A stretch of DNA of 36,076 bases. Source: Octopus bimaculoides (taxonomy: Eukaryota). The stretch lies in contig NC_068991.1 of NCBI RefSeq assembly GCF_001194135.2, forward strand, positions 19,153,216 to 19,189,291, written 5' to 3'. The translations under genes were made by a program, and so were the position numbers. The notes beneath the pieces are model-generated. The model was not told the DNA's origin and made no database searches. It was given only the letters and a program-made list of their open reading frames with translations. This document shows positions 10,474 through 31,785 of this stretch, one piece after another (position 1 is the stretch's first letter; every line of letters begins with the position of its first letter).

Positions 10474-11063
10474 AATGGTTTCAAATTTTAGCAGACGGAC
10501 AGCAATTATGAGGGGAAGAGGCTTAGGGGATTACACCGACCCCAGTACTTGGCTGGTACTTTATTTTATCGATCTCAAAAGAATGAAAGGCAGAGTCAAC
10601 TTCAGTGGCATTGGAACTCAGAGCGTAAAGCTAGAAGAAATGTCGCTAAGCATTTTGTCCGGCGTGCAAACGATTCTTTTCTACTCTAGGGAGGTGGGGG
10701 CAGTCGATTACATTGAGCCAGTACGCAACTGGATGACCGGCAAAGTCGAACTCGGCGGAATTTGAACTCAGAACTTAAAGACAGGCGAAATACCGCTAAG
10801 CATTTCGTCCGGCGTGCTAACGATTCTTATTTCTGTATTGCTCACAAGGGGCTAAACACAATAGGGACAAACAAGGACAGGCAAAGGGATTAAGTCGATT
10901 ATATCGACCCCAGTGCATAACTGGTACTTAATTTATCGACCCCCGAAAGGTTGAAAGGCAAAAATCGACCTCAGTGGAATTTGAACTCAGAACGTAGCGG
11001 TAGACGAAATACCGCTAGGCATTTCACCCGGCGTGCTAACGTTTCTGCCAGCTCGCCGCCTTA
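10474..11063 (-). mobile_element. SINE family B trimer with three different tails
   Basis: Three bodies joined at 10666-10677 and 10816-10827; a single complete head at 11035-11063. Confidence 0.85.
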
Positions 11064-11878
11064 CTGTTTCAAATAACAACACCACAGNNNNNNNNNNNNN
11101 NNNNNNNNNNNNNNNNNNNNNNNNNNNNNNNNNNNNNNNNNNNNNNNNNNNNNNNNNNNNNNNNNNNNNNNNNNNNNNNNNNNNNNNNNNNNNNNNNNNN
11201 NNNNNNNNNNNNNNNNNNNNNNNNNNNNNNNNNNNNNNNNNNNNNNNNNNNNNNNNNNNNNNNNNNNNNNNNNNNNNNNNNNNNNNNNNNNNNNNNNNNN
11301 NNNNNNNNNNNNNNNNNNNNNNNNNNNNNNNNNNNNNNNNNNNNNNNNNNNNNNNNNNNNNNNNNNNNNNNNNNNNNNNNNNNNNNNNNNNNNNNNNNNN
11401 NNNNNNNNNNNNNNNNNNNNNNNNNNNNNNNNNNNNNNNNNNNNNNNNNNNNNNNNNNNNNNNNNNNNNNNNNNNNNNNNNNNNNNNNNNNNNNNNNNNN
11501 NNNNNNNNNNNNNNNNNNNNNNNNNNNNNNNNNNNNNNNNNNNNNNNNNNNNNNNNNNNNNNNATATATATACATATATAAATACATGTATGCATTTTTA
11601 CATGCACACATATATATATATATATGTATATGTGTAAATAAATATATATATATATAAATATTTATATATGTATGTGTATGTATATGTGTATGTATGTATG
11701 TATGTATGTATGTAAGCCACAATACATCTATCTAAAACCGTAAATCTCTAATCCGGCTTTATCCGTTTATTCAACCTGTTTATTTAACGGTAAAGATGTA
11801 CTTCTTTGCATGTCTGAATCCGCCTGCTTTTTTAGCTAACTTACACAACAAAAGAAGAAGGGTATTCACCATATATGG

Positions 11879-13457: not shown

Positions 13458-14086
13458 CACACATACACATGCATAGCTACATGCATACATATATGTGTGT
13501 GTGTGTGTGTGTGTATGTGTGTGGTGCATAAACTTTTGGCTAGGCTATTGGCCAATTACTCAGAGTTTTTTACGGAGTATCATACTTCTTCAGATGACCT
13601 TCATGGCAATAAAGAAAAAAACAACTATAACGACAACAGCAACAACAAGAATCCTCAACCCCCCCCCACTAATTATTTCACTGTTATTGACATCTCTCTT
13701 ATTAATTGCTTCCATCTTTATCTCCTATGTTTGTGTGTGGAATGTATGTATGTGTATATGCATGTAATTATATAGATGCATATACACATATATCTGTACA
13801 TATACTTATATGTCTAATATATATATAAATTTAGAAATACAGAGAAATATATTTATAGTTGCAGACAAATATAAGTAGGTGTGTCTGAGTGCATATGCTT
13901 AAAAATTTGAATATTAAACTAAAAATGTTGAGTATTTTGTGAGTCAATTAAATTAGAACAAAAAATATATATATATTCAGCTGTTCTCCGTTCATGCAAT
14001 CTGAACTGATCTATTCCTAATGTTTTGTTTTAATATAAGCTTATTCTTAGGGCCTGATTAAGACCCATATGATATGTAATTCGAAA

Positions 14087-14273
14087 TATCCTCTCTGCTA
14101 TAGCCACAAGGCCTGAAATTTGGGGAAGGGCAGAAGGGGTTTAATCGGTTGCATCTACCTCAGAACTCAACTGGTACTTATTTTATCGACCCCCCGAAAG
14201 GATAAAGGGCAAAGTCAACCTCGGCAGAATTTGTACGCAGAGCGTGAAGGCGGACAAAATACCGCTAAGCATT
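14087..14273 (-). mobile_element. SINE family B, 5'-truncated diverged copy
   Basis: ctggtacttattttatcgacccc..gaaagg..gcaaagtcaacctcggc; tail aaggcctgaaattt. Confidence 0.8.
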
Positions 14274-14597
14274 GCCGCTGATGAAATTTTAAATATAAAC
14301 AATAATCCTATCTATAACAGGCAGATTTTCTCTGTGTGTGTGTGTGTGTATGTTTAAAATTCATACATTTAACTCAATTCCAAATTTCTTGAATGAAAGA
14401 ATCAGAATTAATATTCTAAATACAATAAGTTAGGTCACATCGTCATTTTTTCAGTCAAAATAACTCCTAATTACGAATAAAATCCAGAAAACTACATACA
14501 AAATTACTTTGCCCCTCTAAAGTACATTTTCATTTTTTGAAATAAAACAAAACTAATAGTAAGATGGAAAATAATCTTTAGTTTTGTATACTTCCAC

Positions 14598-15114: not shown

Positions 15115-15328
15115 TTTACCTTTTACTTGTTACAGTCTTTGCACAGCGGCCATGCTGGAGCACTGCTTTGAAGGGTTTTGTTGAACAAATCGAACCGACG
15201 ACTTATTTTTTTAAAGCCCTGTACTTATTCTGTTGGCCTTTTTTGCCGAACCTCTAAGTTAGGGGTCGTAAATACACCTACACCAGTTGTCAAGATGATG
15301 GGAGGGACAAACACAGACACACACGCAC

Positions 15329-15374
<46 letters not shown>

Positions 15375-15537
15375 GACGGACGTCTTTCAGTTTCCGTCAA
15401 CCAAATCCACTCACAAGGCTTTGGTTGGCTCGAGGCTGTCATGGAAGACACTTGCTCAAGGTGTGTCGCAGTGGGACTGAACCCGGAACCATGTGGTTGA
15501 GAAGCAAGCTTCTTACGACATAGCCACGCCTGCGCCT
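15115..15537 (-). mobile_element. SINE family A, full-length older copy
   Basis: Reverse complement of the 4758 and 17765 copies from head to tail, with internal (AT)n. Confidence 0.9.
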
Positions 15538-16262: not shown

Positions 16263-17764
16263 ATATATACATGTAGATGTAGGTATGTACATACATGTAC
16301 GTATATACGCATATACTCATTTATTATTTGTNNNNNNNNNNNNNNNNNNNNNNNNNNNNNNNNNNNNNNNNNNNNNNNNNNNNNNNNNNNNNNNNNNNNN
16401 NNNNNNNNNNNNNNNNNNNNNNNNNNNNNNNNNNNNNNNNNNNNNNNNNNNNNNNNNNNNNNNNNNNNNNNNNNNNNNNNNNNNNNNNNNNNNNGCACAC
16501 ACGCACACGCACACACACACACACATACACACACACACGCACGCGCACACACACACACACACACACACACATACATGCATACACAGCGATAGCAATGGAA
16601 GTCCAACTCTGCTCTTGCATTAGCCTCCAATACTTTCCCCTCATACCAGTCTGTCGCGTCCCCAACGTATAAATTTGTCTGTGTATGTACGTGTGCGTAG
16701 ACATGTGCGCGCGCGCGTATGTGTGTGTGTGTATGTGTGTGTGCGTGTATGTGTGTGTGTATGTGTGTGTACGTGTGTGTGCTTGTGTGCGCTGGTGGGG
16801 GTTTTATAACCTATAATCAACTGACGAGACCTACGAAGATGACAAAGACACGGCCGCCAGTCGCTCACTGGAAGTTGAAAGGGAAGACGACGACGACGAC
16901 GATGATGATGATGATGGCAGTGGTGGTGATGTGGATGATAATAATAATGATGATAATGATGATGCCGATTCTGATTGGTAGTGGGGGGGGGGGTTGGCGG
17001 TGGAGGCGATAGATTTGAAGAAGAAAAAACTATAAATATGTGTACGTGACTGCGTGTGTTTGTGCATGTGTGTATATGTGTGTGGTAGTATACATGTATG
17101 TGTATATATATATATATGTGTATATACATACATACATACATACATACATACATACACACGTGCATACATACACATATTTGCACGCACACACAAACACGCA
17201 CACACACATCATGGTAGCCAAAGGAGTTGGTGGCGTGAACAGAAGTGGGCGTGATGTAGGAGTGAGTGAGGGTGGGTGGGCTGATGTGGAGCGGCGTGTA
17301 GAAAGAAATATTGCCACAGAAATTAGAGGCAAGAAACTTAGGCCCATTAAATGCGGTAATTTACTTATCATTAAAAAATGTCTTACTAATAGGTTTTGTA
17401 CATTTATTTATTTAATTATTATTATTATTGTTGTTGTTGTTGTTATTATTATTATTGTTGTTATTGTGGTTATTGTTTTTATTTTTCATTATTGTTGTTG
17501 TTGATGTTATTATTGTTATTAACTATTTTGCTGTAATTAGCAACAAGTAGACGTTTGCTTACGTGTTTCTTTGCTATTATTTGTATTATACATATATACA
17601 GACAGACAGTCGTATATACATATCAATATATAGACACATGTACACACACACACATGCACACAAACGCACACGCACACGCACACACATATACGCATATACG
17701 TACTTGCATACACATATATACGCGCATAAGTATATAGATATACCTTTGTGTGTGAGTTTGTGTG

Positions 17765-18191
17765 TGTGTGGTAAGTAGCTTGCTTACCAGCCACATGGTT
17801 CCAAGTTCAGTCACACTGTGTGGCACATAGGGCAAGTGTCTTCTACTATGGCCTCGGGCTGACCAAAATCTTGTGAGTGGATTTGGTAGACCGAAACTGA
17901 AAGAAGCCCGTCGTATATATATATATATATGTATGTATATATATGGGAGTGTATGTGTGCGTATGTGTGTGTATGTATATTTTTGTGTGTCTGTGTTTGC
18001 CCCCTCCCCCAACTTCGTTTGACAACCGATGGTGGTGTGTTCACGATCCCGTAACATTAGCGGTTCAGCAAAAGTGACCGATAGGATAAGTACTAGGCTT
18101 ACAAAGAATAAGTCCTGCTATCAATTTGCTCGACTGAAGGCGGTGCTCCAGCATGGCCGCAGTCAAATGACTGAAACAAGTAAAAAGAAGA
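17765..18191 (+). mobile_element. SINE family A, near full length
   Basis: Head from tgtgtggtaagtagc to tail ggcggtgctccagcatggccgcagtcaaatgactgaaacaagtaaaa. Confidence 0.92.
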
Positions 18192-18412: not shown

Positions 18413-19437
18413 TACATACATGTACGTATATANNNNNNNNNNNNNNNNNNNNNNNNNNNNNNNNNNNNNNNNNNNNNNNNNNNNNNNNNNNNNNNNNNNN
18501 NNNNNNNNNNNNNNNNNNNNNNNNNNNNNNNNNNNNNNNNNNNNNNNNNNNNNNNNNNNNNNNNNNNNNNNNNNNNNNNNNNNNNNNNNNNNNNNNNNNN
18601 NNNNNNNNNNNNNNNNNNNNNNNNNNNNNNNNNNNNNNNNNNNNNNNNNNNNNNNNNNNNNNNNNNNNNNNNNNNNNNNNNNNNNNNNNNNNNNNNNNNN
18701 NNNNNNNNNNNNNNNNNNNNNNNNNNNNNNNNNNNNNNNNNNNNNNNNNNNNNNNNNNNNNNNNNNNNNNNNNNNNNNNNNNNNNNNNNNNNNNNNNNNN
18801 NNNNNNNNNNNNNNNNNNNNNNNNNNNNNNNNNNNNNNNNNNNNNNNNNNNNNNNNNNNNNNNNNNNNNNNNNNNNNNNNNNNNNNNNNNNNNNNNNNNN
18901 NNNNNNNNNNNNNNNNNNNNNNNNNNNNNNNNNNNNNNNNNNNNNNNNNNNNNNNNNNNNNNNNNNNNNNNNNNNNNNNNNNNNNNNNNNNNNNNNNNNN
19001 NNNNNNNNNNNNNNNNNNNNNNNNNNNNNNNNNNNNNNNNNNNNNNNNNNNNNNNNNNNNNNNNNNNNNNNNNNNNNNNNNNNNNNNNNNNNNNNNNNNN
19101 NNNNNNNNNNNNNNNNNNNNNNNNNNNNNNNNNNNNNNNNNNNNNNNNNNNNNNNNNNNNNNNNNNNNNNNNNNNNNNNNNNNNNNNNNNNNNNNNNNNN
19201 NNNNNNNNNNNNNNNNNNNNNNNNNNNNNNNNNNNNNNNNNNNNNNNNNNNNNNNNNNNNNNNNNNNNNNNNNNNNNNNNNNNNNNNNNNNNNNNNNNNN
19301 NNNNNNNNNNNNNNNNATAAATGAAATATGTAAGGATCATCTTGGCCTATTGTAATTTATTTGAATAGAAAGGCCTGGAACTACCCACTCGAATCATAAA
19401 ATCCTTGATCTGTAGAACTTATACGTTCGATAGGTCT

Positions 19438-19596
19438 CCATGTACGGAAAACAATTGTATAGTATGTAAGATGAACCCACAGGTTAACTGTAAGATTAAG
19501 AATGTAGTATATAGTTTTCGGTGTACTGAAGGACAGTGCAGAAACAAGATTCTATATATTTTTTCAATGACTGAAAGATCTCAGCTGCGTAAGAAG
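19438..19596 (+). pseudogene. Penelope-type GIY-YIG endonuclease remnant
   Basis: PCTENNCIVCK..NCKIKNVVYSFRCTEGQCRNKILYIFSMTERSQLRKK fits the C-x4-C-x2-C..C..NVVY..C..C..YIG.T.R.L..R pattern, degenerate at the YIG motif. Confidence 0.55.
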
Positions 19597-19833
19597 AATA
19601 CGATGTTTTACTTTCTTCTGATAACCTATTTTTGATCGCAAAGATAAAAAAGCAGATAAACTTCGTCAACCGTGTTCTTATGGTATGTATGTATGTATGT
19701 ATGTATGTATGTATGTATTTATGTATGTATGTATTTATGTGTGTATTGTGTATGTGTTACATATAAATATGCTTGCTTATATTATATGTATTCACATGTA
19801 TAAATTACATATAATATATATATGTGTGTGGGG

Positions 19834-20340
19834 AAGGCGGCGACTTGGCAGAAACGTTAGCTCCGTTTGTCTGTCCTTGTTTGTCCCCTCTGTGTGTAGC
19901 CCCTTGTGGGCAATAAAGAAATAAGAAACGTTAGCACACCGGCCGAAATGCTTAGCGGTATTTCGTCTACCGTTACGTTCTGAGTTCAAATTCCGCTGAG
20001 GTCGACTTTGCCTTTCATCCTTTCAGGGTCGATAAATTAAGTACCAGTTACGCACTGGGATCGATGTAATCGACTTAATCCCTTTGTCTGTCCTTGTTTG
20101 TCCCCTCTATGTTTAGCCCCTTGTGGGTATTAAAGAAATAAGAAACGTTAGCACGCCGGGCGAAATTCTAAGTGGTATTTCGTCTACCATTACGTTCTGA
20201 GTTCAAATTCCGCGGAGGTCGACTATGCCTTTCATCCTTTCGGGGTCGATAAATTAAGTACCAGTTGCATACTGAGGTCGAACTAATCGATTGGCCTCTT
20301 CTCCAAAATTTCGGGCCTTGTGCCTAGAGTAGAAAAGAAT
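19834..20340 (+). mobile_element. SINE family B array: head, 62-bp tail-only unit, full unit, terminal unit
   Basis: AGAAACGTTAGC at 19850-19861, 19924-19935 and 20141-20152. Confidence 0.92.
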
Positions 20341-22448: not shown

Positions 22449-23215
22449 TTGGGTCATCCCATAAATAATGCGGTTTTTTTATACTTTTATTTTTCAAAAT
22501 TAAAATGAACAAAGTTCTTTTCTAATCTAAAATTTACTCTCCTTCAATTTCTACACTACTCTTCTATCTATGTAATAGACTTACAAGGTCCTTCTTCCAA
22601 AGTTCTCTTGTCCGTAACGAAAAATACTCCTCCAGTACTGTTCTGACCTCATCTACAGAATTCATATTTTTTCCGTCCAAATGATTTTGAAGACTGCAGA
22701 ATAAATGATAATCAGATGGGGCAATGTCTGGCGAATATGGTGGGTGGGGCATCGTTTCCAATTCAATCTGCTCCAACGTCATCTTTGCTGTATGTGAGGA
22801 GTGGCTGTGTGGTAAGTAGCTTGCTTACCAACTACATGGTTCCCGGTTCAGTCCCACTGCGTGGCACCTTGGGCAAGTGTCTTCTACTATAGCCTCGGGC
22901 CGACCAAAGCCTTGTGAGTGGATTTGGTAGGCGGAAACTGAAAGAAGCCCGTCATATATATATATTCTATCGGTCTCTAAAGAGACCGATAGAATAAGTA
23001 CTAGGCTTCCAAAGAATAAGTCCTGGGGTCGATTTGCTCGACTAAAAGGCGGTGCTCCAGCATGGCCACAGTCAAATGACTGAAACAAGTAAAAGAGTAA
23101 AAGAGTAAAAGAGAGCATTATCCTGATAGAAGAACATCTTTCCTCCTGAAACCAAACATGGTCCTTTTTCTTCTAGCGCTGACTTAAGACGCTGAAGCTG
23201 CTCGCAGTAGATCTT
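22449..23215 (-). mobile_element. Decayed mariner 3' half, interrupted by a SINE
   Basis: IYCEQLQRLKSALEEK..FFYQDNA [SINE] HTAKMTLEQIELETMPHPPYSPDIAPSDYHLF; TA followed by TIR-like TTGGGTCATCCCATAAATAATGCGG at 22449. Confidence 0.92.
22797..23113 (+). mobile_element. SINE family A with an internal deletion and fold-back
   Basis: Head and tail match family A; middle module replaced by a palindrome; tail (GTAAAAGA)n. Confidence 0.92.
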
Positions 23216-25810: not shown

Positions 25811-26010
25811 ACTTACTTAGGAAGGCTGTTGTCCACGTCGTCTGCATGCTCGTTCGTCGTCTGCACACTCGTTCGTCGTCTGCACGCTCATTCGTCATCT
25901 GCACGCTTGTTCGTCGCTGATCAGGCCGATGTGGGATTGACATATCCGACTGCAGTGATGACAGGGGTATGGTTGTTCAGTGTCTGATGCTGTAGCTGCA
26001 TTGTTTTTTC
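25811..26010 (-). mobile_element. RTE-clade LINE 3' end with a 4x19-bp tandem repeat
   Basis: RKNNAATASDTEQPYPCHHCSRICQSHIGLIS..ERACRRRGQQPS* matches the RTE ORF2 C-terminal CxxCxRxCxSxIGLxSH motif; TAAGTAAG tail. Confidence 0.75.
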
Positions 26011-26346
26011 GCTACCTGTGACTCTGGGATTGTAGTGCCTTCGGGTCCTGTGTATGAAGGTTGTAATGCATTCGTGAATTGATAGTGTAGTGCTTGAAAT
26101 TTTCCAGCATTAAACTGTATGTTGCTTATTTCGGCCCATTTGTATATCGAATTGAGGTCCCGTTGTAAACTTGCGACGTCAACTTGATTTTTTAGTGTTT
26201 GTGATAATTTTGTACCATCAGCATAGCTGATGACAGTAACTCTGCAAGAGTTCTGTTCAAGAGAGCTATTATGAACAATAATGGCCCCTGAACAGTTCTC
26301 TGATGGACGCCACTTGGGATTTGAGTTTCCTCAGAAAGGGCAACAT
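26011..26346 (-). pseudogene. CR1-type LINE reverse transcriptase fragment
   Basis: SGVHQRTVQGPLLFIIAL / VISYADGTKL..LQRDLNSIYKWAEISNIQFNAGKFQALHY, with a frameshift. Confidence 0.88.
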
Positions 26347-29336: not shown

Positions 29337-29595
29337 GCAACGGTCCTCCAAGATCAGTTCATGAATTTTCGTGATGTTTTCATTCGTTCGGGAGTTCGAC
29401 GGTCTCCCTGAACACGAGGTTGGTCTTCAAGCGACAGGTGTTCATTCCTTAAGTGTGAAAAACCACTCATAAACTTGGTTTCTTTTTTTAAACTCATGGC
29501 AGCGTCCTTGTAAGCTGTTTGTAAGCATGGTAACTGTTTCGGCTGCCGTTTTTCCCAGCAAAAATGAAAATTAAAAGGCAAAATACTTGCTCGGA
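29337..29595 (-). pseudogene. Mariner transposase N-terminal HTH remnant
   Basis: FLLGKTAAETVTM / LQTAYKDAAMS / FSHLRNEHLSLEDQPR / SGRPSNSRTNENITKIHELILEDR across frameshifts. Confidence 0.85.
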
Positions 29596-29629
29596 TTTCA
29601 CACTACCAACATTGAATGCAAAACCACAT

Positions 29630-29780: not shown

Positions 29781-29810
<30 letters not shown>
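29630..29810. repeat. Compound (AAC/AGC/AAGAAC)n microsatellite
   Basis: Direct reading. Confidence 0.95.
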
Positions 29811-29813
<3 letters not shown>

Positions 29814-30020
29814 CCTTTCTGCTATATGTGCAACACCTGAAATTTTGAGTGAGAGATTAAATCGATTACATCGACCTCAATAATGCCACCAGTACTTAAC
29901 TTATCGACCACGAAAAGATGAAAGACAAATTCGACCTCGGCGTAATTTGAACTCAGAACGATGAAACGCCACTGAGCATTTTCACCGGAGTGCTAACGAT
30001 TCCGCCTGCTCACCGCCTTA
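29811..30020 (-). mobile_element. SINE family B monomer, full-length older copy
   Basis: Minus strand reads taaggcggtgagcaggcggaatcgttagc..aaaatttcaggtgttgcacatatagcagaaaggatt. Confidence 0.85.
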
Positions 30021-31323: not shown

Positions 31324-31473
31324 ATAATATATATATATATGCTCCTAATAATTCAAAATTTTATCTTGTTTTACTTGTGCGGTGCTGGTACACATCAGCA
31401 AGTAGACTCTACACTATTTGCTTATATACTTCAGACCAGTGATTCAAATTCGCTTCAAGGTGGCTTGAGGTAT

Positions 31474-31520
31474 ATGATGCTGACGAGCTGAAATAGCAGC
31501 GAAATATCGATATCCATCGT
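31474..31520 (+). ncRNA. Type I hammerhead ribozyme with a canonical core
   Basis: Stem I ATGATG/CATCGT; core CTGACGA (31480-31486); stem II GCTG/CAGC; GAAA (31501-31504); palindromic stem III ATATCGATAT; AUC cleavage triplet ending at 31514. Confidence 0.85.
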
Positions 31521-31659
31521 TCTCGTCCACGTATGGAGCGAGTTGTCTCGTCTGGCTTGAGGTATTCATTGTTTTTTTTTTAACACCCGGCATCATAAAG
31601 AAACGTTTCTCTCTGATGAGAATGATCAAATGTTCGTGCCGCATCAGGTGTCGAAGTGG

Positions 31660-31785
31660 TCGCAGAGCAATGTGAAATGAAGTGTTTTGCTCAGGAATAC
31701 AAAGCATGACCCAGTCTAGGAATTGAAATCACGATTTAAAGATGGTGAGTGCAGCACCCTAACCACTAAACCGTACTCCCTCATA
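31660..31785 (-). mobile_element. Older CORE-type SINE head
   Basis: gagcaatgtgaaatgaagtgttttgctcaggaatac..ggaattgaaatcacg..ccctaaccact, similar to families C and D. Confidence 0.6.

What the first reader, a model, noticed from the sequence alone, without database searches (positions are those of the whole stretch)
19834..20340. SINE that appears to insert site-specifically into its own A-box
Seen: AGAAACGTTAGC, part of the tRNA-like A-box region, occurs three times. The first two copies flank a 62-bp piece that is only the family's 3' tail, which looks like a 5'-truncated insertion with a 12-bp TSD. The next unit (217-bp period) resumes exactly in register, and only one 16-nt leader exists for the whole array. 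The tails end in sequence matching the start of the target (..AATAAGAA, ..AAAAGAAT). Inference: target-primed reverse transcription guided by 3'-end homology into pre-existing copies, with homologous 5' joining, builds arrays. This would be a self-homing SINE system that I do not recognise as described.
Basis: partly seen in the sequence, partly recalled or inferred. Interest (0 to 1): 0.8.

Follow-up and report, generated by a model that had tools for sequence, protein, structure and literature searches.

The report
In-register tandem SINE arrays in octopus
A short octopus retroelement (SINE) forms small head-to-tail arrays in which each inner copy joins the previous copy's tail at one fixed base of its own promoter region; this fits new copies landing in old ones, though similar arrays are known in other animals and one window cannot settle the mechanism.

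Summary
At 19834-20340 a 16-nt leader and AGAAACGTTAGC are followed by a 62-bp tail-only piece, a full 217-bp unit and a third unit, all in register. The third unit carries a different tail. Two more arrays in the window (11062-10475 and 4664-4406, minus strand) use the same tail-to-head junction. One junction involves a second tail type whose last 5 nt (AGAAT) overlap the head.

Units within an array are not each other's closest relatives. Tail-A units cluster across arrays, and all four tail-A pieces sit on a family head. This argues against local duplication and for retrotransposition-coupled joining at head position 17.

Repeated insertion into resident heads, primed by 3'-end homology, is my best reading (about 0.4). 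Three alternatives remain open: reverse-transcriptase template switching, retrotransposition of read-through multimers (array U has no T4 terminator), and an assembly artefact in this gapped scaffold.

The architecture (complete first head, head-truncated inner units) is already described for bivalve SINEs, and SINE multimers are common in rodents. I therefore rate it a new variant of a known kind. Only 60 kb of octopus DNA could be examined.

The parts
19834..19849 (+). Array U: the only 16-nt leader (AAGGCGGCGACTTGGC). It holds the first half (TGGC) of the A-box-like motif.
19850..19861 (+). 12-mer AGAAACGTTAGC, copy 1 (head positions 17-28). Upstream direct repeat of the 62-bp piece.
19862..19923 (+). 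U1: a 62-bp piece consisting of tail A only. It is 95.2% identical to W1's tail and 91.9% to the adjacent U2 tail.
19924..20140 (+). U2: a 217-bp unit made of 12-mer, body with B-box-like GAGTTCAAATTCC, and tail A. It has no leader.
20141..20340 (+). U3: 12-mer, body and tail B1 (...CTAGAGTAGAAAAGAAT), followed by an (AT)n flank. Terminal unit of array U.
10828..11062 (-). Array V, unit V1: complete leader, 12-mer, body and tail A. It has a TTTTT run inside the body.
10678..10827 (-). V2: starts at AGAATCGTTAGC in register, has an internal deletion, and carries tail B1 with its last 18 nt identical to U3's.
10475..10677 (-). V3: joined to V2's tail with a 5-nt overlap (GTAGAAAAGAAT/CGTTTGC). 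It is the most diverged unit and carries tail C (...AAAATTTGAAACC).
4432..4664 (-). Array W, unit W1: complete leader, 12-mer (AGAATCGTTAGT), body and tail A.
4406..4431 (-). W2: the first 26 nt of a further unit, joined in register to W1's tail and then cut by N gap 3667-4405.
14088..14278 (-). Solo member, 5'-truncated, with tail B ending ...AGAGAGGAT.
29812..30019 (-). Solo full-length member, with tail B ending ...AGAAAGGATT, followed by (GTT)n.

Best explanation
The element is a SINE family with tRNA-promoter-like boxes, found in an octopus genome. Its younger members (tail A, and tail-B1 copies ending in ...AGAAT) were added by target-primed reverse transcription into the head of resident older members.

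Proposed steps (inferred):
1. The bottom strand is nicked just 5' of head position 17 (GGC|AGAA[A/T]CGTTAGC).
2. The exposed 3' end pairs with the AGAAU-like 3' terminus of the incoming RNA and primes cDNA synthesis. The RNA may instead carry a longer stretch of head sequence, if it is a Pol III read-through transcript of an element that already sits upstream of a head.
3. A staggered top-strand cut about 12 nt downstream leaves a 3' overhang, AGAAxCGTTAGC. This overhang is identical to positions 17-28 of the incoming element.
4. The cDNA anneals to the overhang, so the 5' junction forms in register.

Outcome: the newcomer takes over the resident leader and an intact A-box-like motif. The resident body is left behind the newcomer's tail without the first half of that motif. 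If reverse transcription aborts early, the 5' end is joined without homology and the 12-bp duplication becomes visible. That is the 62-bp piece at 19862-19923.

Shown: the fixed register, heteromeric arrays, cross-array relatedness of tail-A units, and the 12-bp repeats around a tail-only piece.

Inferred: the order of events, the nick position, the annealing steps and the read-through RNA.
For: - Five of five tail-to-head junctions in three loci begin at head position 17.
- The register was reached with two tail types. Tail B1 overlaps the head by AGAAT.
- All four tail-A pieces lie on family heads. Heads make up about 5 of 229 AGAAW sites in the window (p about 1e-5 for 3 loci).
- Tail-A bodies cluster across arrays at 88.7-92.0% identity, against 89.3% between neighbours U2 and U3.
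- The B units of arrays U and V differ twice as much (83.9% identical) as their A units (92.0%), Fisher p=0.04.
- Identity to the consensus falls from 5' to 3' within arrays: V1 92.7 > V2 87.1 > V3 84.5, and U2 96.0 > U3 91.3.
- The 62-bp piece is bounded by exact 12-bp repeats and is not a copy of the neighbouring tail.
- Two solo members in O. bimaculoides have clear TSDs of 15-19 bp, so 12 bp is not far from the family's range.
- Tails A, B and C keep the same small hairpin, with a G-C/C-G flip in A. This suggests tail A is itself a working reverse-transcriptase recognition tail.
- The other SINE family in the window has 5 dispersed copies and no tandems, so the effect is family-specific.
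Against: - Only three arrays could be examined, in about 27 kb of non-gap sequence.
- Two of the arrays abut N gaps.
- The age gradient is weak. Private substitutions are U2 2 against U3 6, and V1 6 against V3 6. CpG retention hardly differs between U2 and U3.
- The '12-bp TSD' would also appear if an internal deletion happened to start 12 nt into the shared head, and V2 shows that deletions occur in these arrays.
- Solo members' TSDs start with ATT..., not AGAA, so the head site is not the family's usual nick site.
- No head-plus-leader duplication was seen, although a full-length cDNA joined without homology would produce one.
- Position 5 of the 12-mer (A,T,T in array V) needs one extra mutation under a strict TSD model.
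- No partner LINE with these tails was found.
Confidence: 0.4

Rival explanations
1. Template switching within a single retrotransposition event. Reverse transcriptase copying one SINE RNA stops near head position 17. Its nascent cDNA end (...ATTCT-3') pairs with the AGAAU 3' terminus of a second SINE RNA, and copying continues. The whole heteromeric array is laid down at once.
For: - There is a 5-nt overlap at the B1-to-head junction and a similar AGAA overlap for tail A.
- Arrays mix subfamilies.
- CpG retention and private-substitution counts do not clearly separate the units of one array by age.
- Template switching is an accepted source of chimeric SINEs and retrogenes (for example PMC5729268 and PMC2104539, listed but not read here).
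Against: - Known template jumps occur mostly at the 5' end of the template, which would keep the leader in inner units. No inner unit has a leader.
- No solo copy in 60 kb is truncated at position 17, so there is no sign of a pause site there.
- The 62-bp piece would need a second jump, without homology, from inside the tail to head position 28.
- Old-looking tail-C RNA would have to be co-expressed with young tail-A RNA.
Confidence: 0.2
2. Composite multimeric SINE. A few arrays formed once, by any route. Because the units contain no Pol III terminator, an array is transcribed from the first unit's promoter as one RNA and retrotransposed through the last unit's tail, as with Alu or the CYN dimers and trimers. 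Tail A is then mainly a linker.
For: - There is no T>=4 run in the 503 nt of array U.
- Inner units lack the first half of the A-box-like motif, so only the first unit can drive transcription.
- Tail A is never seen at a free 3' end in 60 kb.
- Arrays U and V share the order A then B1, with an 18/18 identical B1 terminus.
- All four A-to-head junctions are the same and could be inherited from one ancestor.
Against: - Array compositions differ: A-fragment/A/B1, A/B1/C, and A/?.
- The B1 halves are twice as diverged between arrays as the A halves (p=0.04).
- The B1-to-C junction shows the register arose more than once.
- Tail A keeps the tail hairpin through compensatory change, which a mere linker need not do.
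Confidence: 0.2
3. A DNA-level process. Unequal crossing-over, replication slippage or gene conversion between neighbouring SINE copies creates and reshapes the tandems, as proposed for bivalve and squamate SINE tandems.
For: - The published interpretation of similar arrays is unequal homologous recombination (PMC11481361; PMC10702118).
- Direct repeats of AGAA-rich sequence at the tail end and in the head could mediate misalignment.
Against: - Neighbouring units are not each other's nearest relatives and carry different tails.
- The same junction occurs at three unlinked sites.
- The co-resident SINE family shows no tandems.
- Arrays have only 2-3 units, with no homogenisation.
Confidence: 0.1
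4. Assembly artefact. The short-read assembler joined reads from different SINE copies through shared k-mers, producing tandems that do not exist.
For: - There are 14 N gaps in 36 kb.
- Array W runs into a gap and array V starts 25 nt after one.
- No independent assembly of these loci could be retrieved.
Against: - The tail-A-to-head junction is present with four different combinations of flanking variants, so it is not one collapsed path.
- Array U lies in 1.8 kb of gap-free sequence with unique flanks.
- Mis-joins would not respect one register or produce a tail-only piece with exact 12-bp repeats.
Confidence: 0.05

Closest known systems
Tandem-like SINE structures of bivalves, type TSD1-(SINE)n-TSD1 (Scapharca broughtonii; PMC11481361)
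   Same: The first unit has a complete tRNA-related head. Inner units are truncated at one and the same head position. The last unit has a complete tail. Arrays are a few units long, and some include other families.
   Different: In the bivalve arrays the inner units are also tail-truncated and the units are highly similar. The authors suggest unequal recombination. Here the tails are complete up to a 5-nt overlap with the head, units belong to different subfamilies, and the same junction recurs at unlinked loci. An array-level TSD could not be verified here.
Head-to-tail multimers of mammalian SINEs (B2 about 40%, Dip about 49%, Ves 11.5% of copies; PMC8466645)
   Same: A large share of family members sits in tandems (3 of 5 loci here). 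The origin is openly undecided between insertion into a resident copy and retrotransposition of multimeric templates.
   Different: In the mammalian cases, per PMC8466645, one SINE is thought to integrate into the tail of another. From general knowledge, those tails are A-rich L1 targets and each unit keeps its full head. Here the join is inside the head, at one fixed base, and the tails are LINE-type rather than poly(A).
Site-specific non-LTR elements and their non-autonomous derivatives (R2 and its SIDEs in 28S rDNA, PMC3414825; Utopia in U2 snRNA genes, PMC4640811; Tx1-clade elements, from general knowledge)
   Same: Insertion occurs at one fixed position of a multicopy Pol-transcribed sequence. 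The proposed use of RNA-target homology at the 3' junction and of cDNA-target annealing at the 5' junction matches what I recall for R2. That recollection was not checked here.
   Different: The target here would be the element's own family rather than a host gene. No partner LINE, no target-site consensus beyond the head itself, and no empty or filled alleles were available.
Composite multimeric tRNA-derived SINEs (Alu-type dimers; CYN-II/III of flying lemurs; Twin SINE) - named from general knowledge, and mentioned in PMC10702118
   Same: Several small-RNA-derived monomers are joined head to tail and transcribed from the first monomer's promoter.
   Different: Composite SINEs amplify as a fixed multimer. 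The three arrays here differ in composition, and their halves differ in divergence.
SINE-derived satellites of squamates (PMC10702118)
   Same: These are tandem repeats derived from SINE parts, with a longer terminal unit reaching the SINE terminus.
   Different: The squamate satellites form long, homogenising arrays of up to about 1000 units from one SINE portion. Here there are 2-3 heteromeric whole units.

Membership tests
tRNA-derived SINE | Internal Pol III promoter (A and B boxes) in a tRNA-related head | tested here: inconclusive
   By eye, TGGCAGAATCG resembles TRGCNNAGTGG (9 of 11) and GAGTTCAAATTCC resembles GGTTCGANNCC, about 50 nt apart. ARAGORN finds no tRNA. Rfam gives no tRNA hit even at E<=10.
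tRNA-derived SINE | Short dispersed copies flanked by target-site duplications | tested here: met
   There are 5 loci in the window and 7 matches (6 near-full copies and one fragment) in O. bimaculoides locus L028. Two solo copies have clear TSDs of 15-19 bp: ATTATTTCAGAGTACCAT/ATTATTTCAATGTACCCT and ATATTTTCAACGATGT/ATATTTCAATGATGT.
tRNA-derived SINE | 3' tail shared with a partner LINE | not testable with these tools
   No other sequence in the window matches tails A, B or C. The only LINE remnant (25980-26330) is unrelated. No octopus genome could be searched.
Tandem-like SINE multimer, TSD1-(SINE)n-TSD1 type | Complete head only in the first unit; inner units truncated at one head position; last unit with a complete tail | tested here: met
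   Arrays U, V and W.
Tandem-like SINE multimer, TSD1-(SINE)n-TSD1 type | One TSD pair flanking the whole array | tested here: inconclusive
   Array U lies between (AT)n/(GT)n tracts. The 3' end of W is in a gap. V shows ATTTGAAAC on both sides, but that 9-mer is also part of the tail-C end.
Site-specific (homing) retroelement | Copies occupy one fixed position of a defined target sequence | tested here: met
   Four of four tail-A pieces and one tail-B1 unit join at head position 17. No tail A occurs elsewhere in 60 kb. The sample is very small.
Site-specific (homing) retroelement | Reproducible target-site duplication or deletion at that site | tested here: inconclusive
   Only one case is visible (12 bp, 19850-19861 and 19924-19935). 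In full-length joins any TSD is hidden by homology.
Site-specific (homing) retroelement | Empty versus filled target sites among individuals or species | not testable with these tools
   No orthologous or allelic locus could be fetched.
Composite multimeric SINE | The multimer amplifies as one unit: same unit order, and equal divergence of all parts between loci | tested here: not met
   Compositions differ: Afrag-A-B1, A-B1-C, and A-?. A halves are 92.0% identical and B1 halves 83.9%, Fisher p=0.04. Three arrays are too few to exclude it.
SINE-derived satellite | Long, homogenised array of one SINE portion | tested here: not met
   Arrays have 2-3 units, different tails and 77-92% identity.
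Retrozyme or hammerhead tandem repeat | Hammerhead ribozyme in each unit | tested here: not met
   No ribozyme family matches at the gathering threshold or at E<=10.

The most novel reading that the evidence does not exclude
A SINE subfamily that propagates only by homing into the promoter region of resident members of its own family. Its units lack a Pol III terminator, so its transcript runs from tail A into the next unit's head. That 3' head sequence anneals to nicked heads elsewhere, in the way R2 co-transcripts use flanking 28S sequence. The cDNA's own head region anneals to the target overhang, so every insertion restores a full promoter for the newcomer and recreates a configuration able to home again. 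Arrays would then be a record of successive promoter captures.
Probability: 0.3. Interest if true: 0.75.

Novelty: new variant of a known kind. Interest (0 to 1): 0.5.

Why it matters
SINEs make up a large share of octopus genomes: about 4% to 11.6% in published estimates (PMC12988792, PMC13282606). They have been linked to genome reshuffling in these animals.

If a subfamily targets its own family's heads, three things follow. It would be a SINE with sequence-specific integration, which would limit damage to host genes. It would give a retrotransposition route from interspersed repeats to tandem repeats. It would also give a concrete answer to the open question of how SINE multimers arise, which PMC8466645 explicitly leaves undecided.

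There is a practical consequence too. Repeat annotators that merge or split such arrays will miscount copies and ages.

If the arrays are only composite or recombination products, the finding is an ordinary addition to the list of tandem-like SINEs.

Tried and rejected
- DNA pattern scans for the SINE. The metagenome collection gave 27 hits, all matches of 19-29 nt confined to the B-box-like motif. The viral collection gave 0 and the prokaryote-genome collection gave 0. No octopus DNA is in these collections.
- Protein route to more octopus DNA. An ORF spanning the junction had no homologue. The LINE RT remnant gave one 706-bp ENA contig. The mariner remnant gave one O. bimaculoides protein and hence one 24.5-kb locus, L028. 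L028 holds only old solo copies with B or C tails. Two long ENA contigs carrying related mariner proteins contain no copy of the family.
- Exact look-ups of two ORFs that cross the arrays found nothing on record, so the loci could not be validated independently.
- A literature k-mer search for four family 19-20-mers found no papers. Octopus repeat papers do not describe tandem SINEs.
- Retrozyme or hammerhead idea: rejected.
- Partner-LINE search in the window: no tail match.
- My by-eye reading of 19369-19632 as a Penelope GIY-YIG remnant was not confirmed by Pfam.
- Private-substitution and CpG-retention 'clocks' were too noisy to order the units of an array.
- A general direct-repeat scan was swamped by microsatellites and N runs.

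Full report
**What is there**

The window is a gap-rich scaffold: 14 N runs, 8,977 N in total, 39% G+C. It is full of microsatellites and transposon remnants.

The family in question also occurs in Octopus bimaculoides chromosome record CM046609.1, in locus L028. The window is therefore octopus or a close relative.

At 19834-20340 the sequence reads, in order:
- leader AAGGCGGCGACTTGGC (16 nt)
- AGAAACGTTAGC
- 62 nt that match only the last 62 nt of full units
- AGAAACGTTAGC, then body, then the same 62-nt tail ('tail A')
- AGAAACGTTAGC, then body, then a different tail ('tail B1', ...CTAGAGTAGAAAAGAAT)
- an (AT)n flank

TRF reports a 217-bp period with 92% matches. The 12-mer and its 1-2-mismatch variants occur 9 times against 1.6 expected.

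A profile search finds five loci of this family in the window, and three of them are arrays.
- Array V (11062-10475, minus strand) is V1 (full head, tail A), then V2 (tail B1, with an internal deletion), then V3 (tail C).
- Array W (4664-4406, minus strand) is W1 (full head, tail A), then the first 26 nt of a further unit, then a gap.

In all five tail-to-head junctions the downstream unit starts at the same base, head position 17 (AGAA[A/T]CGTT...). No inner unit has the leader.

The V2-V3 junction uses tail B1. That tail's free end in U3 is ...GTAGAAAAGAAT, and in V2-V3 it reads GTAGAAAAGAATCGTTTGC. Tail and head therefore overlap by AGAAT.

Tails A, B and C are variants of one tail. They share ...GGC-CTTGT-GCC... 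followed by a 13-16-nt A/G-rich terminus. The small hairpin is kept in 83.7% of cells and shows a G-C/C-G flip between B/C and A. The covariation score is reached by 5 of 500 shuffles, which is modest evidence on 13 short sequences.

**Is it a SINE?**

Solo members in L028 carry TSDs: two clear ones of 15-19 bp and one less certain one of about 10 bp. The dispersed short copies fit a SINE.

The tRNA relationship rests only on A- and B-box-like motifs that I read by eye. ARAGORN and Rfam do not recognise a tRNA.

The junction falls inside the A-box-like motif (TGGC|AGAATCG). Inner units therefore lack its first four bases, and only the first unit of an array should be a Pol III promoter. Array U has no run of four T in 503 nt, so read-through transcription of the whole array is possible.

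**What the arrays are not**

They are not local duplications.
- U2 is 92.0% identical to V1 and 91.3% to W1, but 89.3% to its neighbour U3.
- The 62-bp piece is 95.2% identical to W1's tail and 91.9% to the adjacent U2 tail.
- Neighbouring units carry different tails.

They are not a general property of repeats here. The second SINE family in the window has five dispersed copies and no tandem.

They contain no hammerhead ribozyme, and they are not long homogenised satellites.

**Sequential insertion, one event, or multimer?**

Several results point to younger tail-A units added upstream of older units.
- Tail-A units are the least diverged: 92.7-96.0% identity to the consensus, against 91.3, 87.1 and 84.5% for U3, V2 and V3.
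- Between arrays U and V, the B1 units differ twice as much as the A units (20/124 against 12/150 mismatches, Fisher p=0.04).
- L028 holds only CpG-decayed copies with tail B or C, and none with tail A.
- The tail-only piece bounded by exact 12-bp repeats is the classic footprint of a 5'-truncated TPRT insertion, and 12 bp is close to the family's TSD lengths.

These results are weak.
- The consensus is dominated by tail-A units.
- CpG retention is 13/15 in U2 against 12/15 in U3.
- Private substitutions do not order the units.
- An internal deletion starting 12 nt into the head would mimic the 'TSD'. Only about 8% of random deletion start points would fall in a plausible TSD range. That figure is my estimate, not a computation.

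**Specificity**

A 5-nt match cannot explain the targeting by itself. AGAAT and AGAAA together occur 229 times in the window, against about five family heads. Yet four of four tail-A pieces, at three loci, sit on heads.

There are two ways out.
- Something beyond the 5-mer guides integration. This could be an endonuclease or partner LINE specific for the head. It could also be a longer RNA-target homology, if tail-A RNAs are read-through transcripts that end in the next unit's head.
- Tail A never travels alone, because it is the linker of composite multimers.

Solo TSDs start with ATT(A/T)TT. The head is therefore not the family's ordinary nick site, which favours a homology-based route over endonuclease preference.

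**Mechanism I consider most likely (about 0.4)**

TPRT into resident heads, primed by pairing between the nicked head and the AGAAU-like (or head-extended) 3' end of the incoming RNA. A staggered second cut leaves the 12-nt overhang AGAAxCGTTAGC. The incoming cDNA can anneal to it in register, because the overhang is the element's own sequence.

This single scheme produces several observed features:
- the seamless junctions
- the single leader per array
- the visible 12-bp repeat when reverse transcription aborts early
- heteromeric arrays

It also means that each newcomer captures an intact promoter.

The rivals are template switching in one event (0.2), retrotransposition of read-through multimers (0.2), DNA-level recombination (0.1) and mis-assembly (0.05). 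They are not mutually exclusive. Arrays built by homing could later move as multimers.

**Comparison with what is known**

- Bivalves. SINEs of Scapharca broughtonii form TSD1-(SINE)n-TSD1 arrays with a complete first head, inner units truncated at one head position and a complete last tail. The authors attribute them tentatively to unequal recombination (PMC11481361).
- Rodents and bats. 40%, 49% and 11.5% of B2, Dip and Ves copies lie in head-to-tail multimers. The authors state that they cannot tell insertion into a resident copy from dimeric templates (PMC8466645).
- Squamates have SINE-derived satellites (PMC10702118).
- R2 and its non-autonomous derivatives, and Utopia, are precedents for integration at one fixed site of a multicopy RNA gene (PMC3414825 and PMC4640811, listed but not read here).

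The architecture is therefore known. What would be new is a demonstrated self-targeting mechanism and a subfamily that exists only on heads of its own family. I found no description of tandem SINEs in the octopus repeat papers that I could search.

**Limits**

Only 36 kb plus 24.5 kb of octopus sequence could be read. The genome-wide census that would decide the matter is described under next steps.

Noticed in passing
window 4760-5112 (+), 15150-15530, 17760-18060, 22801-23170, 2401-2613: A second, longer SINE family is present. It has an internal (TA/TG)n microsatellite and five or more dispersed copies, none of them tandem. It shares a module of about 45 nt with the family studied here (AAGTACYAG...CTGGGGTCGAT...TCGACTWAA). 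It also contains TGTCTGTGTTTGTCCCC, which resembles the tail-A-specific stretch TGTCTGTCCTTGTTTGTCCCC, so tail A may be a chimera. The short match is not significant on its own.
   Followed up: partly
window 11063-11087 (-) and 10479-10487 (-): The 25 nt between gap 11088-11563 and V1's complete head contain ATTTGAAAC. The same 9-mer ends tail C of V3. This is either an array-level TSD or the end of a further tail-C unit hidden in the gap that abuts a full leader, which would be a different kind of junction.
   Followed up: partly
window 14081-14090, 29800-29812, 10465-10480; L028 20960-20980, 22285-22310, 19540-19560: Solo members' target-site duplications start with ATT(A/T)TT, and copies often sit beside ATT/GTT/AT microsatellites. 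This hints that the partner LINE prefers AT-rich or (TAA)n-like targets.
   Followed up: partly
window 22567-22824 (-) and 29357-29602 (-): Mariner-type transposase remnants. The first matches SETMAR-like or Transposase_1 proteins, including one from O. bimaculoides. The second was judged by eye only.
   Followed up: partly
window 25980-26330 (-) and 25836-25916: A LINE reverse-transcriptase remnant. It has a weak RVT_1 match and is 74% identical to one ENA protein. Next to it lies a 19-bp tandem repeat of 4.3 copies. It is unrelated to the SINE tails.
   Followed up: partly
window 31447-31728 (-): An ORF with a weak Ribosomal_S21 match (E about 1e-4, below Pfam's cut-off). It may be an MRPS21-like pseudogene or exon.
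   Followed up: no
window 19369-19632 (+): An ORF just upstream of array U looked to me like a Penelope-type GIY-YIG piece (..NVVYSFRCTEGQCRNKILYI..). Pfam gives no match, so this remains unconfirmed.
   Followed up: partly
window 19850-19861, 19924-19935, 20141-20152; 11035-11046, 10816-10827, 10666-10677; 4637-4648, 4420-4431: Position 5 of the 12-mer is A,A,A in array U, T,T in array W and A,T,T in array V, while all older solos have T. The variant tends to follow the array rather than the subfamily. This is what TSD copying predicts, but one extra mutation is needed in V.
   Followed up: partly
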